From: Penicillus capitatus
Lineage: Eukaryota; Plantae; Chlorophyta
Direction of reading: 5' to 3'
Length of the DNA stretch: 64,000 bases
Assembly (NCBI GenBank): GCA_965649825.1
Contig: OZ287696.1
Span: 2,233,724 to 2,297,723, forward strand
Shown: positions 6,470 to 12,247 of the stretch, piece by piece
Numbering within the stretch: the first letter of the stretch is position 1
Layout: every line of letters begins with the position of its first letter
Made by a program: the position numbers and the translations under genes
Notes under the pieces: generated by a model
Told to the model about the DNA's origin: nothing
Databases searched by the model: none
What the model saw: the letters and a program-made list of their open reading frames with translations, nothing else

Positions 6470-7872
6470 TTAGTTGCCTTCATCTATCGCTTCTTCTTCG
6501 ATGAGGGGCAGACGCTGATATTTTTCATTGAATCGGTCTCTCTTTCGCGAGTCAGGAATCGTCACGAGGACGACCGAGATCACGATGATAAGAGCACCGA
6601 TACCAGAAATGTACGAAATTGTCTCGGAAAGTAAAATAATGCCTAAAACTCCAGAGAAGATCATGTTCGTCATCAAGAGCGTTGTGGTTTTTGTCGGCGG
6701 TCCAATCTGCATGGCCCGCGATTGGACAACCTGAGCAAACAAACCAACAACGCAAAGTACTGTGTAGAGTGAAAGTTGAAGAAACGAATTCTCTGCATTA
6801 AATGGGATGGGCGTTTCCGTTACCACAAACGGGACGCTTATGAGGAAGAGGAAAATGTGCATGCACGCTGTCAGATTCAGACTGCTCACGCTTTTGCCGA
6901 TATATCTATGTGATCTTTGAGAATGACCCATCCAGATCATAAGAGATGGAACACACCTGAGCAGGACAAAGACAAGTCCGGTAAGGATATTTGTCGCTAT
7001 GGCTGCCATGACACCGATCTGTCGACGGTTGCTATCCCACTCTGCATCATCATCAGTATGGCCACCAAAAAGTACAAGAGGTTGTGCCACAAAGATATTG
7101 CCCACAATACATCCGGCAATACCTATCCAAGAAAGAAGGCCTAAACTCTCCATACCAAGAAAACCAGACAGTATCGCGGCTACCACTGTATAGCACAATG
7201 AAAACGACAATCTAAGATTCAATCGATCAATCTAAGGTGGTCATACCTGGATAGCTGTTACATAAGAAGCTAGCGTCGGATAATGGAAGTTTGGATGTTG
7301 CTAATGTTTGAAAAAGGAAACCTGTGGATCCTAAGATCCCTCGGGCAATGACCAATGGGAGCTTTTTCTTGGGTTCGATGAGAGAAAGCTCACTGTACCA
7401 GCTCACGCAGATCAGAACCACACCGATAAAGACACCTCGGATTCCTGCAATTTGAAAAATAGAGGTTCTCTCGGAAAGGAGCTTGACACTGGTCAGTGAT
7501 AATGCAAGTCCAAGGGAGGCTGTCATGATCAAACAGACATAGCAGTTCCAATAGTAACTGTTCACACATTCGTGAAGAATCTATCAAACGTCACATCACA
7601 GTAGTTGAGCATCACGCACTTTTTAATGCTGTTTAGGGTTTGCGAAATCACGCCTGGAAGACTGTCGCCTATCGAACAAAGGAGCACGGCGATCAGTTTC
7701 GAAGCAACACGGCATTCTCTTCTGTGTGACCACCAGAGATATGTAAGGAAATGCTACCATTAGAATCGGCTGTCGTTAAAGGAAGCGTCGTGCTGTAGTC
7801 GATTCCTGTCTCGCTCGGCGTGTCTGCTACCGAGCCGGGGACCGTCATAATAACCTTCGTATTGGTCTCCAT
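6470..7872 (-). CDS. EamA/DMT-family membrane transporter (multi-exon)
   Basis: Multi-TM translation with motifs IARGILGSTGF, KLPLSDASFL, SRAMQIGPP, GVLGIILLSETISYISGIGALII. Short GT-AG introns link the frames; start inferred at METNTK. Confidence 0.8.
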
Positions 7873-8300
7873 TTCAACGAGAGATTCCGTTTTGTTTTTC
7901 TCGCGACAGCACGAAGGCACGTTACTAGTATATGAAATGATTAAATCCGGCTGTTCTGCTGCATCGACGGCTGAAGTATTACGACGCGCACCTCGCCTCT
8001 CCCAGTATCCCCATTCGATATAACAGTTGCCTAGAATACGTATCGGCCGTTCGTTGGCGTCACACACAACAGTGCGTTGTCGTCTCGTGTGTTTTGTTTG
8101 TCGGGCGACGTTGGGTCTGCCGCTTGCGCGTGGTGGTGTGTGGCGCTGAGTTTAACGGCATCCTTGTCGTTGACGATGTGATGGTGACGGACACATTAGT
8201 CAACCATTCCCTCATCGCTGGCTTCTTATACCAGTGTCTCCAGACCGCAAAAGCGTTGTTTCTTGTGCACCTCTGCTGCGCATTTTCGTTTGTTCCTTTC

Positions 8301-8525
8301 ACGACGGCGACCCGCGTGAACGACCAGCTGCACGGCGACCCTGCCGAAAAGAACTCCTGTGCTTCAAAAGAGATTCGTTACGGCGGTGGACGCGGCGCAC
8401 GTGCTTCGTTAGGTGGTTGTCCTTCGGTAAACACAAGCACGCATCGTCAACGAGTTCTCATAAGATCTCGTCATTAGGATTTGTTGCACACAGCTGGTGG
8501 TGGAAACGGTGCCTCTGTGCTCTGA
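8301..8525 (+). CDS. Non-AUG (ACG) spliced upstream ORF of VTC2/GGP, about 57 aa
   Basis: Exons 8301-8426 and 8478-8525 (51-nt GT-AG intron) translate to TTATRVNDQLHGDPAEKNSCASKEIRYGGGRGARASLGGCPS/DLLHTAGGGNGASVL*, matching the plant GGP uORF motif GGRGALPSEGGSPSDLLFLAGGG. Confidence 0.82.
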
Positions 8526-8548
8526 TTCGTATTCTTTAAACCTGTAGA

Positions 8549-9885
8549 ATGTATTTGTCGCGTTTATCAAATGTGCTTGCTTTGAATCAGCTCGGCCACA
8601 CCGAGGAAGACATGGACGGGGGTTCTGTTGCTCGCCCTCGTGGTCTCGTTAGTCAATGTGCCTATCGAAAGCTGACGAAGATCTCGGTCAAGAGTGACTG
8701 GGGCACTAGTCCTCCACGCGTTCGTTCCTTTGGCGAACTGAGCGACATCGAGAATATGTAAGCTGTAGAAAATGGTCCACGGTGAGAGACCTTTACCTTG
8801 TGGTTGACTCTAGGGTTATGGAGGATGATGTGTCTGAATCTGTCCTTGCTGTTGAGAGCCCCACGAAGATGACGGCAGGCGAAGATGCAAAGAGCATGGT
8901 CGAGCTTGTGATGCTGGCTATGTGGGAGCAATGTGCTGAGAAGGGTCTCTTCCGTTATGATGTGACAGCCTGCTCAACCAAGACACTTCCTGGACTCTAC
9001 GGTTTTCTCCTGCAGCTGAATGAGGGTCGGGCAACGAAGAAGAGACCAACGGAGTTCCGTGTCGACCGCGTTGTTCAGGAGTTCGACGAAAAGAAATTCA
9101 ACTTCACCAAAGTCTCTATGCAGGAAGTGCTTTTTCAGATTGATTTCAGTGCCTCCCACGAGACGGAGATTGATCCTGACGCCACAGCTGGCAGAAGTCC
9201 AGACTTAGTCATGATCAATGTCAGTCCCATCGAGTATGGTCACATTCTCTTGGTCCCTCGTGTCCTCGATAGACTCACACAGACGATCACTCCGCACACA
9301 ATGAAGCTGGCGCTTCAGTTTACGGCGGCGGTAGGAACTCCGTACTTTAGACTGGGATACAATTCATTGGGGGCATATGCCACCATCAATCATCTGCACT
9401 TTCAGGGTTACTATCTATTGGCTCCTTACCCAGTCGAAAGATCCCCGACAATTCCTCTCTCACATTCTTTTCTTCATTCTGAGCATATCTCCCTGTCGAA
9501 GCTGGCAGGATATCCCGTTCAGGGATGGGTCTTCGAAATGACAGAAGCATTCGATCAGGCAGTCCTTTCGATGGCAGAAGTTGTCGGACGTGTCTGCATG
9601 CAGCTTCAGGAAATGAACATCCCGCACAATGTGCTGATCTGCGACTGTGGAGCGCGAGTCTTCGTTTGGCCACAGTGCTATGCCGAGAAGCAGTCCATGG
9701 GTGTCGTTCCTGAGAAGCTCCTCGACACTGGTGTCAATCCAGCTGCATTCGAAATCGCAGGCCACGTGATTTTGAAACGACGTACCGATTACGAAGACAT
9801 GACGCAGAGAGATGTATGCGACCTTCTTTCTGCGGTTTCGTTGACGGAAGAGCGTTTTGAAGCATTAACAGAGTCCTTGACATGA
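8549..9885 (+). CDS. VTC2: GDP-L-galactose phosphorylase (ascorbate biosynthesis)
   Basis: Exons 8549-8757 and 8814-9885. Motifs GLFRYDVTAC, QLNEGRATKKRPTEFRVD, INVSPIEYGHILLVP, LGYNSLGAYATINHLHFQ (HIT), VNPAAFEIAGH. Confidence 0.96.
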
Positions 9886-9965: not shown

Positions 9966-10876
9966 CTATCCACCGGTTTAACAGATTTGAGTTTGGTGTA
10001 AGCCTAGATGATTGAAACCGCACACCATACGGCGACATGAACCACAAGACCAAGGGTACACCTCTTGGGGCGAGAGATTTTGGACAGCGAGGACTTTGTG
10101 CCGCGTCGATGGGCCTTTCGTTACGGAGAGCTGTGTCGATCGACAGCCCAAGATCTTCCCAAAAAGCTTAAGCACTTCATTGCTGGCCTGTTCATGCGAA
10201 ATGCTGCTGATGACAGAAACGCGTATGGCATCGGCTGAGATCTTCAGCAACGAGGCTCTGGTGCCTTTGTCTTCGATCTCCAACGTAATCTGACATCCAT
10301 CATCGCCGACGGGTACAATACAGGGTGGCACGGGTGGGACACCAGATGTGTCCACCGAATGGCTCGTGGCAAAGGTACTCACAGCTTGATCCATGACATA
10401 GAGATACCGTCCCTTCTCTTCCGACCTACCATCCATGCAGCACTTAGACAAGAGACGTATGCTTCGGAGAGGGAGTGAGATGCCGATAAGCAACGGGAAG
10501 GATGTCAACAACATTCAGTCGGTACTGTTTCTCTACATTCCCGTTCCGCCTACACTCTTGTCGTCCTCTCACTCTGATCACTCATATGAGGGCAGCGAAC
10601 CGTCGGATGAACTTGACACCGCCATCCGTCGTGCGGAGTTTGACCAAATGGCGTTCTGTATCAATGACGATCGCGTTGTCTGTCTTTCTACGTGGAAGGC
10701 GTTCGATTTTGCAGTCTGCATGTATCAAGGCATGTCTAAGGGAAGGATGTGGGTTGGTTGGTGCCTGTGATGAAGGCAGGTTTGCCAGAGTAGCGACAGT
10801 AGTAGACGCGAAGGTCTTCACTTTTGTCGTCGACGCGTTCGTCACTTGCAAATGTCAACGTCGACCGTTTCGGCAT
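9966..10876 (-). CDS. STEEP1/UPF0428 + DUF167 (UPF0235) protein, At5g63440-like
   Basis: MPKRSTLTF..LRVYYCRYSG..LPRRKTD..EKQYRLN..VPPCI..EIEDKGTRA..RVSV..KILGCRSTQLSVTKGPSTRHKVLAV. Four introns, two apparently GC-AG. Confidence 0.88.
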
Positions 10877-11017
10877 TCTCAGACTGCCTGCCGGCAACAC
10901 GTCTATATGCACGAACACACTGACAACAGAAACTAGCTGTCACATCACACAGTGCTCGCTCCAATATCATCTCCAAGGCTGTGGAGAGATGTTTGAGGCG
11001 TCGATGGTGTCTGACAA

Positions 11018-12247
<1,230 letters not shown>

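What the first reader, a model, noticed from the sequence alone, without database searches (positions are those of the whole stretch)
8301..8548. Land-plant-type non-AUG ascorbate-feedback uORF upstream of an algal VTC2, split by an intron
Seen: removing a 51-nt GT-AG intron (8427-8477) creates an ACG-started ~57-aa peptide ending GGGRGARASLGGCPSDLLHTAGGG, which stops 23 nt before the VTC2 ATG. Known: land-plant GGP/VTC2 mRNAs carry a conserved ACG-initiated uORF (GGRGALPSEGGSPSDLLFLAGGG) that mediates ascorbate feedback on translation. Inference: this control predates the chlorophyte/streptophyte split, and is invisible to ORF callers because it is both non-AUG and spliced.
Basis: partly seen in the sequence, partly recalled or inferred. 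Interest (0 to 1): 0.8.

Follow-up and report, generated by a model that had tools for sequence, protein, structure and literature searches.

The report
Vitamin-C feedback uORF in a green alga
The leader of this green alga's vitamin-C control gene (GGP/VTC2) carries the same small ACG-started regulatory reading frame known from land plants, here cut in two by a 51-base intron, and the same peptide lies upstream of GGP across green algae, so the element is far older than the "mosses to angiosperms" range in the literature I could read.

Summary
Removing the GT..AG intron 8427-8477 joins two in-phase pieces into a 56-57 codon frame. It ends at TGA 8523-8525, 23 nt before the ATG (8549) of a GDP-L-galactose phosphorylase gene.

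A profile of the peptide core, built only from other organisms, scores the spliced peptide at E=1e-12. The next unrelated fragment in the window scores E=0.7.

The same core (GGRG-x5-GG-x-PS | D-x-L-x-x-AGGG) lies upstream of GGP in Ostreobium, Bryopsis, Myrmecia, Tetradesmus, Dunaliella, Cymbomonas, Ostreococcus-like contigs, Marchantia and Moringa. It also occurs in 64 of 80 GGP loci from metagenomes, against 0 of 80 on the opposite strand.

In genomic DNA of Cymbomonas and the core chlorophytes an intron sits at the same codon boundary. Transcript-like contigs of relatives carry the peptide uninterrupted.

Synonymous sites are saturated while the residues are kept, so selection acts on the peptide.

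The likely start is ACG 8304, not 8301: it has A at -3 and G at +4, and ACGGCG is invariant in the three closest relatives.

Untested: transcription, splicing and translation in this organism, and ascorbate responsiveness in any alga.

No paper I could read reports an algal GGP uORF, but the founding paper was not readable.

The parts
8304..8306 (+). Most likely uORF start codon: ACG in context ttcacgACGgcg (A at -3, G at +4).
   Evidence: 'ACGGCG' is invariant in the alignment of the window with L002, L004 and L005. An in-frame ACG with A(-3)/G(+4) lies 22-32 codons before the core in 11 of 12 taxa compared.
8304..8426 (+). uORF exon piece 1. It has a variable N-terminal part (TATRVNDQLHGDPAEKNSCASKEIRY) followed by the first half of the conserved core.
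8382..8426 (+). Conserved core, first half: GGGRGARASLGGCPS.
   Evidence: Unspliced exon piece 1 alone scores 19.7 bits against a profile from other taxa.
8427..8477 (+). 51-nt phase-0 GT..AG intron splitting the uORF between Ser and Asp. If retained, its last codon (TAG 8475-8477) ends the frame before the second half of the core.
   Evidence: The intron position is the same in L004 (56 nt), L005 (44 nt), Ostreobium (121), Bryopsis (278), Cymbomonas (106), Myrmecia (95), Tetradesmus (129) and 12 metagenome loci. Its style matches the coding-region intron 8758-8813.
8478..8525 (+). uORF exon piece 2: DLLHTAGGG (second half of the core), then NGASVL and the stop TGA 8523-8525.
8526..8548 (+). 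23-nt spacer between the uORF stop and the main AUG.
   Evidence: Spacers in the other algae are 14-118 nt.
8184..8548 (+). Stretch with no ATG in any frame. It fits a scanned leader in which subunits that pass the ACG reach the main AUG.
   Evidence: There are 0 ATG in the 191-nt spliced stretch after the start codon (2.8 expected, P about 0.055), and a further 120 nt upstream (8184-8303) are also ATG-free.
8181..8183 (+). In-frame ATG 41 codons upstream of ACG 8304. It matters only if transcription starts upstream of it. ATG 8176 is followed at once by TGA.
   Evidence: It is not conserved: L002, L004 and L005 have no in-frame ATG.
8549..8757 (+). GGP/VTC2 coding exon 1 (starts ATGTAT, conserved in the relatives).
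8758..8813 (+). 56-nt GT..AG intron in the GGP coding region.
   Evidence: The joined protein aligns over 100% of its length to P0002.
8814..9885 (+). GGP/VTC2 coding exon 2 (GDPGP1_N and GDPGP1_C domains).

Best explanation
This is the chlorophyte ortholog of the land-plant GGP/VTC2 conserved-peptide uORF. It is a cis-acting translational brake in the mRNA leader of GDP-L-galactose phosphorylase, the enzyme that controls flux into ascorbate synthesis.

Proposed mechanism:
1. The 51-nt intron is spliced out.
2. Some scanning 40S subunits start at the weak ACG codon 8304, which sits in a strong context. The rest scan on through the AUG-free leader to AUG 8549.
3. Ribosomes that translate the 56-codon uORF make a nascent chain whose last ~23 conserved residues (GGRG-x5-GG-x-PS-D-x-L-x-x-AGGG) lie in the exit tunnel as the ribosome nears the end of the uORF.
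4. That ribosome stalls there, 20-40 nt upstream of the main AUG. It blocks following subunits and lowers GGP synthesis.
5. In land plants the stall responds to high ascorbate, which gives negative feedback.

Shown here: the element, its peptide-level conservation, its ACG context, the conserved intron position, and spliced transcript-like contigs in relatives.

Inferred from land-plant work: translation of the uORF, stalling, and ascorbate dependence.
For: - Position and anatomy.
- The downstream gene is GGP: one search returned 1,288 homologs, and named ones are called GDP-L-galactose phosphorylase. Precomputed domains are PF26216/PF26217.
- Match to a profile from other taxa: E=1.2e-12 only when spliced. 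Pattern hits are unique in the window.
- Same core upstream of GGP in Ostreobium and Bryopsis, in Myrmecia, Tetradesmus and Marchantia, in Cymbomonas, and in Dunaliella and Moringa.
- Survey of 80 metagenome GGP loci: 52 contiguous, 12 split, and 0 of 80 on the reverse strand. This includes contigs whose GGP is 77% identical to Ostreococcus tauri.
- Selection on the peptide: window versus the others gives pS 0.57-1.0, pN 0.06-0.26 and pN/pS 0.08-0.40. Invariant Gly/Arg/Pro/Asp/Ala columns use 2-5 synonymous codons, including both AGA and CGN for Arg.
- Start codon: ACG with A(-3)/G(+4) in 11 of 12 taxa, 22-32 codons before the core. ACGGCG is invariant among the window and its three closest relatives.
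- The leader is free of ATG.
- Splicing in relatives: L002/L017 and L020 are transcript-like contigs with an uninterrupted peptide. L015 is the spliced Dunaliella form.
- Land-plant mechanism: uORF-dependent, ascorbate-linked repression in reporter assays, as summarised in PMC11066809. Ribosome and disome stalling upstream of the stop of the Arabidopsis GGP uORF is reported in PMC13578316.
Against: - There are no RNA-seq, transcription-start or ribosome data for this organism. It is known only from a metagenome contig.
- If transcription starts upstream of 8181, an in-frame AUG would make a longer, AUG-started uORF.
- Ascorbate sensing by the peptide is still unproven even in plants (PMC11066809, PMC6191929).
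- Chlamydomonas is reported to lack ascorbate feedback in the physiological range (PMC9916717, PMC7020166).
- Two GGP transcripts 55-56% identical to the window's GGP (L018, L019) have more than 900 nt upstream and no recognisable uORF, so the element can be dispensed with.
- ATG depletion in the window alone is only marginal (P about 0.055).
Confidence: 0.78

Rival explanations
1. It is the same homologous peptide uORF, but in this alga it is a constitutive brake or senses something other than ascorbate, such as a GDP-sugar, redox state or light-linked signal. 'Ascorbate feedback' would then not apply.
For: Chlamydomonas lacks ascorbate feedback in the physiological range, and algal VTC2 is driven mainly by oxidative stress (PMC9916717, PMC11066809). 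Direct binding of ascorbate to the peptide or ribosome has never been shown (PMC11066809, PMC6191929). Core positions 5-9, 12 and 16-19 differ between algae and land plants.
Against: The invariant residues are the same from Ostreococcus-like algae to angiosperms. This argues for one conserved molecular interaction. The element is tied to GGP in every lineage examined.
Confidence: 0.17
2. The uORF is AUG-initiated at 8181 and about 97 codons long, and the ACG plays no role.
For: ATG 8181 is in frame with no intervening stop. Many algal lineages do use an in-frame AUG for this uORF.
Against: The three closest relatives (L002, L004, L005) have no in-frame ATG. L005 has ACG as its only plausible start. 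ACGGCG is invariant while the sequence between 8181 and 8304 is not conserved. In AUG-type algae the AUG lies 5-32 codons before the GRG of the core, not 68. The ATG-free stretch begins right after 8181, which suggests that transcription starts downstream of it.
Confidence: 0.04
3. It is not a regulatory uORF. It is either an alternative N-terminal coding exon of GGP, a free-standing micropeptide gene, or a chance resemblance.
For: The peptide is under purifying selection, as a trans-acting micropeptide would also be.
Against: A stop codon follows the core within 1-14 codons in all algae examined. The uORF frame differs from the main frame, and the spacer length varies from 14 to 118 nt, so the uORF cannot be fused to GGP. 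It always lies on the same strand directly upstream of GGP, with 0 of 80 control hits. Chance is excluded.
Confidence: 0.01

Closest known systems
Land-plant GGP/VTC2/VTC5 conserved-peptide uORF (ACG-initiated, ascorbate-responsive; Laing et al. 2015, as described in PMC11066809 and bioRxiv 10.1101/2021.03.25.436978)
   Same: It lies in the GGP leader. It starts at ACG with A(-3)/G(+4). Its length is 56 aa against 60-65 aa. The core GGRG-x5-GG-x-PS-D-x-L-x-x-AGGG is shared: 17/23 identical to Moringa and 16/23 to Marchantia. Selection acts on the peptide. The stop lies upstream of the main AUG.
   Different: It is interrupted in the gene by a 51-nt intron inside the conserved core; Marchantia genomic DNA has none there. 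The host is a chlorophyte alga, outside the published 'mosses to angiosperms' range (PMC7084844, PMC12559526). The tail after AGGG is shorter, and the stop is only 23 nt from the main AUG. The functional response is untested.
AUG-initiated versions of the same uORF in prasinophyte-type algae found here (Cymbomonas; Ostreococcus-like and high-GC marine contigs)
   Same: It has the same position upstream of GGP and the same core skeleton (GRG...G-x-x-P-x-D...GGG).
   Different: Those have an in-frame AUG 5-32 codons before the core and no ACG in Kozak context. The Ostreococcus-like and high-GC contigs have no intron. The window belongs to the ACG class, like land plants.
Other metabolite-responsive arrest-peptide uORFs: the AZIN1 uORF with its AUU start and ribosome queuing, the S1-bZIP sucrose uORF and the SAMDC uORF (as described in bioRxiv 10.1101/2021.03.25.436978, PMC13578316, PMC11062462)
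   Same: The logic is shared: a weak or leaky start, a conserved nascent peptide, a stall that blocks access to the main AUG, and feedback on a biosynthetic pathway.
   Different: The peptide sequences are unrelated. The S1-bZIP uORF stalls at the stop codon, whereas the Arabidopsis GGP uORF stalls upstream of it (PMC13578316). No family relationship exists.

Membership tests
GGP/VTC2 conserved-peptide uORF (land-plant type) | Lies in the 5' leader of a GDP-L-galactose phosphorylase gene, on the same strand, and ends before the main AUG | tested here: met
   The uORF is 8304-8525 and the main ATG is 8549. The downstream protein is GGP.
GGP/VTC2 conserved-peptide uORF (land-plant type) | Conserved peptide core (land plants: GGRGALPSEGGSPSDLLFLAGGG) | tested here: met
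   The window has GGRGARASLGGCPSDLLHTAGGG. It is 17/23 identical to Moringa cDNA L016 and 16/23 to Marchantia L011. The profile E-value is 1.2e-12.
GGP/VTC2 conserved-peptide uORF (land-plant type) | Non-AUG (ACG) start in a strong initiation context, a few tens of codons before the core | tested here: met
   ACG 8304 has A(-3)/G(+4), 26 codons before the core. Moringa, Marchantia and eight algal sequences show the same arrangement. Actual use of the codon is not testable here.
GGP/VTC2 conserved-peptide uORF (land-plant type) | Conservation at the amino-acid level rather than the nucleotide level | tested here: met
   pN/pS is 0.08-0.40 with saturated synonymous sites. Invariant residues use 2-5 synonymous codons.
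GGP/VTC2 conserved-peptide uORF (land-plant type) | No AUG between the uORF start and the main AUG, which permits leaky scanning | tested here: met
   There are 0 ATG in 191 spliced nt (2.8 expected, P about 0.055), and the 120 nt upstream (8184-8303) are also ATG-free. The statistical support for the window alone is weak.
GGP/VTC2 conserved-peptide uORF (land-plant type) | Present and uninterrupted in the mature mRNA | tested here: inconclusive
   There are no transcript data for this organism. Relatives support it: transcript-like contigs L002/L017, L020, L027 and Dunaliella L015 have the uninterrupted peptide, while related genomes have an intron at that boundary.
GGP/VTC2 conserved-peptide uORF (land-plant type) | The uORF is translated and stalls ribosomes | not testable with these tools
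   This needs ribosome profiling or toeprinting. It is shown only for Arabidopsis (PMC13578316).
GGP/VTC2 conserved-peptide uORF (land-plant type) | Represses GGP translation in response to high ascorbate | not testable with these tools
   This is reporter evidence from land plants only (PMC11066809). Chlamydomonas reportedly lacks the feedback (PMC9916717).

The most novel reading that the evidence does not exclude
The GGP arrest-peptide uORF is ancestral to all green plants and algae, and this has gone unreported. Three reasons would explain that. In Cymbomonas and the core chlorophytes a phase-0 intron cuts the conserved core in two. The start codon alternates between AUG (prasinophyte-type algae) and ACG (core chlorophytes and land plants). 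Algal leaders are also rarely annotated. On this reading, the intron could give algae a second control layer. Intron retention or an alternative acceptor, as in the Dunaliella isoform L014, yields an mRNA whose uORF lacks the DxLxxAGGG half and would escape feedback. Tiny genomes such as Ostreococcus would become simple models for how a ribosome senses ascorbate.
Probability: 0.45. Interest if true: 0.75.

Novelty: new member of a known kind. Interest (0 to 1): 0.6.

Why it matters
GGP is the main control point of vitamin C synthesis, and its uORF is already edited in crops to raise ascorbate. How the peptide, the ribosome and ascorbate interact is still unknown.

The papers I could read give the element's range as 'mosses to angiosperms' and treat green algae as lacking the feedback. 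The same peptide, under purifying selection, turns out to sit upstream of GGP across Chlorophyta, including Ostreococcus-like picoplankton. Three things follow:

1. The origin of this control moves back to the base of the green lineage.
2. The truly invariant residues are defined: G-R-G, G, P, D and G-G.
3. Small unicellular systems, and natural AUG/ACG and intron/no-intron variants, become available for testing the mechanism.

It is also a clear example of a functional coding element that standard gene callers cannot see.

Tried and rejected
- Pfam scan of the algal and Moringa peptides at E<=10 found no family.
- Rfam scan of the whole window found nothing.
- RNA-level conservation as the cause was rejected, because synonymous sites are saturated.
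- Chance was rejected.
- An N-terminal extension of GGP was rejected. A stop follows the core in all algae examined, the frame differs from the main frame, and the spacer length varies.
- ACG 8301 as the start was set aside in favour of 8304, on context and conservation.
- ATG 8181 as the start is judged unlikely (see rivals).
- My first strict patterns missed real variants: Ser for Ala before GGG, 'PM' or 'PY' for 'PS', and a 6-residue spacer. I had to relax them. The relaxed patterns still gave 0 of 80 hits on the control strand.
- Laing et al. 2015 (PMC4558653) and Vidal-Meireles et al. 2017 could not be read. Whether they examined algal leaders rests on my memory and on how later papers cite them.
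- Chlamydomonas itself could not be tested. Its VTC2 was not among the hits listed, and contig look-ups were exhausted.
- The organism could not be named. The closest named GGPs are Bryopsis (56%) and Ostreobium (54%).

Full report
**1. What is in the sequence**

I read 7801-9600 directly and translated it.
- The stretch 8301-8426 is a whole number of codons (126 nt).
- The stretch 8427-8477 is a 51-nt GTAAAC...CATTAG segment.
- The stretch 8478-8525 continues the same frame to TGA.
- 23 nt then separate this stop from ATG 8549.

Spliced, the frame reads (T)TATRVNDQLHGDPAEKNSCASKEIRYGGGRGARASLGGCPSDLLHTAGGGNGASVL*. Unspliced, it stops at the intron's last codon (TAG 8475-8477), before DLLHTAGGG.

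The downstream gene is 8549-8757 + 8814-9885, with a 56-nt intron (GTAAGC...CTCTAG) of the same style. It encodes a 426-aa protein. That protein has 1,288 homologs with GDPGP1_N/C domains, and named ones are called GDP-L-galactose phosphorylase.

The window is part of a 488-kb contig of an ENA metagenome assembly. The closest named GGPs are Bryopsis (56%) and Ostreobium (54%), which are bryopsidalean green algae. Unnamed sequences reach 61-67%.

**2. Not chance**

Two patterns built only from other organisms hit the six-frame translation of the window once each, at 8385 and 8478. Simulated windows gave 0 of 300 and 0.027 hits per window.

A profile of 29 distinct cores from other organisms was built with the window and its three closest relatives left out. 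It gave:
- spliced peptide: 44.4 bits, E=1.2e-12;
- exon piece 1 alone: 19.7 bits;
- exon piece 2 alone: 13.3 bits;
- best unrelated fragment in the window: 6.7 bits, E=0.74.

The full match therefore exists only after splicing.

**3. Close relatives**

Contigs carrying GGPs 61-62% identical to the window's were fetched.
- L002 and L003 are 1.8-kb transcript-like contigs. They have the peptide uninterrupted (...SGGGRGAKASLGGHPSDILRKAGGG...), with a stop 14 nt before the ATG.
- L004 and L005 are genomic contigs from one sequencing run. They have GT..AG introns of 56 and 44 nt at exactly the same Ser|Asp boundary.
- The intron sequences do not align with each other, while the flanking codons do.

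**4. Named genomes**

The same architecture lies upstream of GGP in these organisms:

| Organism | Group | Peptide core | Intron |
|---|---|---|---|
| Ostreobium quekettii | Ulvophyceae | GGGRGVRVSQGGCPS / DTLHLAGGG | 121 nt |
| Bryopsis sp. | Ulvophyceae | GGGRGASSSQGGCPS / DVLHCAGGG | 278 nt |
| Myrmecia bisecta | Trebouxiophyceae | AGGRGLRPSLGGCPS / DSLHLAGGG | 95 nt |
| Tetradesmus obliquus | Chlorophyceae | GGGRGASAATGGKPS / DVMHQAGGG | 129 nt |
| Cymbomonas tetramitiformis | prasinophyte | ARGRGARPSEGGSPT / DLLTLAAGG | 106 nt |
| Marchantia (genomic) | land plant | HGGRGATPSEGGRPSDLTYLAGGG | none |
| Moringa (cDNA) | land plant | HGGRGALPSEGGSPSDLLFLAGGG | cDNA |

Dunaliella tertiolecta has two transcript contigs. 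L015 is spliced (GGGRGTPTSLGGAPFDLLHLAGGGP*). L014 carries a 458-nt insertion at the same spot, within 1 nt. The insertion's 3' end is a good acceptor, but its 5' end is not a canonical donor. It may therefore be an alternative-acceptor form rather than simple intron retention.

**5. Unbiased survey**

A scan of JGI metagenome and metatranscriptome contigs with a GGP alignment returned 80 GGP loci. Relaxed patterns were applied to the upstream region on the same strand:
- 52 loci have the core uninterrupted.
- 12 have it split by a GT/GC..AG intron at the same boundary.
- 16 have none, and most of those have less than 350 nt of upstream sequence.
- The reverse strand of the same stretches gave 0 of 80.

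Positive loci include many land-plant transcripts. They also include contigs whose GGP is 77% identical to Ostreococcus tauri (AGRGGAAKEGAEPNDVTQLTGGG, no intron). High-GC marine contigs are positive too (TGRGSSSIADGALPYDVVHLAGGG).

Real exceptions are L018 and L019. Their GGPs are 55-56% identical to the window's. They have more than 900 nt upstream, which includes the 3' end of another gene, but no recognisable core.

**6. What is under selection**

Across the 23 core codons, the window compared with the eleven other sequences gives saturated synonymous differences (pS 0.57-1.0) and few replacements (pN 0.06-0.26; pN/pS 0.08-0.40). Invariant Gly, Arg, Pro, Asp and Ala columns use 2-5 different codons, and Arg uses both AGA and CGN. 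Selection therefore acts on the peptide, not on an RNA sequence or structure.

**7. Start codon**

In 11 of the 12 sequences an in-frame ACG with A at -3 and G at +4 lies 22-32 codons before the core. In the window this is ACG 8304 (ttcacgACGgcg), not 8301. 'ACGGCG' is invariant among the window, L002, L004 and L005, and in L005 it is the only plausible start.

The non-AUG start is not universal, however. Cymbomonas, the Ostreococcus-like and high-GC groups, and several other algal groups have an in-frame AUG 5-32 codons before the GRG of the core, and no ACG in Kozak context. Of 27 distinct cores in the survey, 11 have the Kozak ACG and 18 have an in-frame ATG.

The window does have an in-frame ATG at 8181, 68 codons before the GRG. 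It is not conserved in the relatives. The ATG-free stretch runs from just after it to the main ATG, which suggests that transcription starts downstream of it.

**8. Mechanism**

In land plants the uORF represses GGP translation. Repression is lost when the uORF is mutated, becomes strong when ACG is changed to AUG, and is enhanced by raising ascorbate (summarised in PMC11066809). Disome profiling places the stall upstream of the stop codon in Arabidopsis (PMC13578316).

The algal element keeps every sequence feature on which that model relies. In algae the stop follows AGGG by only 1-14 codons. The conserved 23 residues would therefore fill the exit tunnel when the ribosome is 14-118 nt from the main AUG (23 nt in the window), a good roadblock position.

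I therefore take the same cis-acting arrest mechanism as most likely (confidence 0.78). The ascorbate-specific part is less certain. The ligand interaction is unproven even in plants (PMC11066809, PMC6191929), and Chlamydomonas is reported to lack the feedback (PMC9916717, PMC7020166).

**9. Comparison and novelty**

All sequence-level defining features of the land-plant GGP uORF are met, so this is a member of that family. What differs is the host and the intron inside the core. The host is a chlorophyte. The intron is shared by Cymbomonas and the core chlorophytes examined. It is absent from Marchantia genomic DNA and from the Ostreococcus-like contigs.

Ten full-text searches and the papers read found no mention of an algal GGP uORF. 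Papers from 2020 and 2025 still give the range as 'mosses to angiosperms' (PMC7084844, PMC12559526). The founding paper and the Chlamydomonas VTC2 paper could not be read, so prior mention cannot be excluded.

**10. Verdict**

There are two refinements: the start is at 8304, and AUG-started versions exist in other algae. Function in algae is untested.

It is a new member of a known kind with real evolutionary and practical interest (0.6).

Noticed in passing
L018 1-980 and L019 1-931 (JGI metatranscriptome contigs): Two GGP transcripts 55-56% identical to the window's GGP have no recognisable uORF core in more than 900 nt upstream. Both instead carry the conserved 3' end of another gene (...EKFDSYLL.ASR...GTVPQDVM.DVTGQSTDS*), followed by about 300 nt of leader. 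They may be a uORF-less GGP paralog, or a lineage that escaped this control.
   Followed up: partly
L008 3677; L067, L078, L095 and others: Start-codon dichotomy. Land plants and the core chlorophytes with a recognisable start, including the window, have ACG with A(-3)/G(+4). Cymbomonas, Ostreococcus-like contigs, high-GC marine contigs and several other algal groups have an in-frame AUG instead. The ancestral state is ambiguous.
   Followed up: partly
L014 231-689 versus L015 192: The Dunaliella tertiolecta isoform L014 has a 458-nt insertion at the uORF intron site. Its uORF then reads on into unrelated sequence and lacks DLLHLAGGG. The 5' edge of the insertion is not a canonical donor (GC..CA or CC..AG), and the junction sits 1 nt off the phase-0 position seen elsewhere.
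   Followed up: partly
window 8040-8477 and 8549-8761: The gene calls stored with the metagenome contig list the unspliced first uORF piece as a 145-aa ORF and GGP exon 1 as a separate 70-aa ORF (L001 2223-2660 and 2732-2944). The stored GGP protein (P0001, 355 aa) is only exon 2.
   Followed up: yes
window 8549-9885 (protein): The session's Pfam scan returned no family for the 426-aa GGP. Yet the precomputed annotations give PF26216/PF26217 for it and all its homologs. This is probably a library-version difference.
   Followed up: no
window 6470-7565 (-), 9978-10514 (-), 10945-12239 (-): Neighbouring genes are an EamA-family transporter transcribed divergently from GGP, a PF02594 (PF1765-like) gene, and a multi-exon spermidine synthase. 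The GGP and PF02594 neighbourhood is shared with L004. Introns seen in this lineage are very short (44-56 nt).
   Followed up: partly
L011 3748-4101 (Marchantia polymorpha): The Marchantia uORF frame stays open for 117 codons and overlaps the annotated GGP start by 101 nt. Either a leader intron follows the core or the annotated start is not the one used.
   Followed up: no
L006 2681; L007 2539; L010 core: Ostreobium and Bryopsis have an extra in-frame ATG inside the uORF, between the ACG and the core. Tetradesmus has a Met within the core. Any initiation there would still produce the conserved C-terminal part.
   Followed up: no
window 8304-8504 and the relatives: The distance from the ACG to the end of AGGG is 46-50 codons in the ACG-type algae and 52-56 in the two land plants. 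This is about five ribosome footprints. It may matter if queued ribosomes promote initiation at the weak start, as proposed for AZIN1.
   Followed up: no
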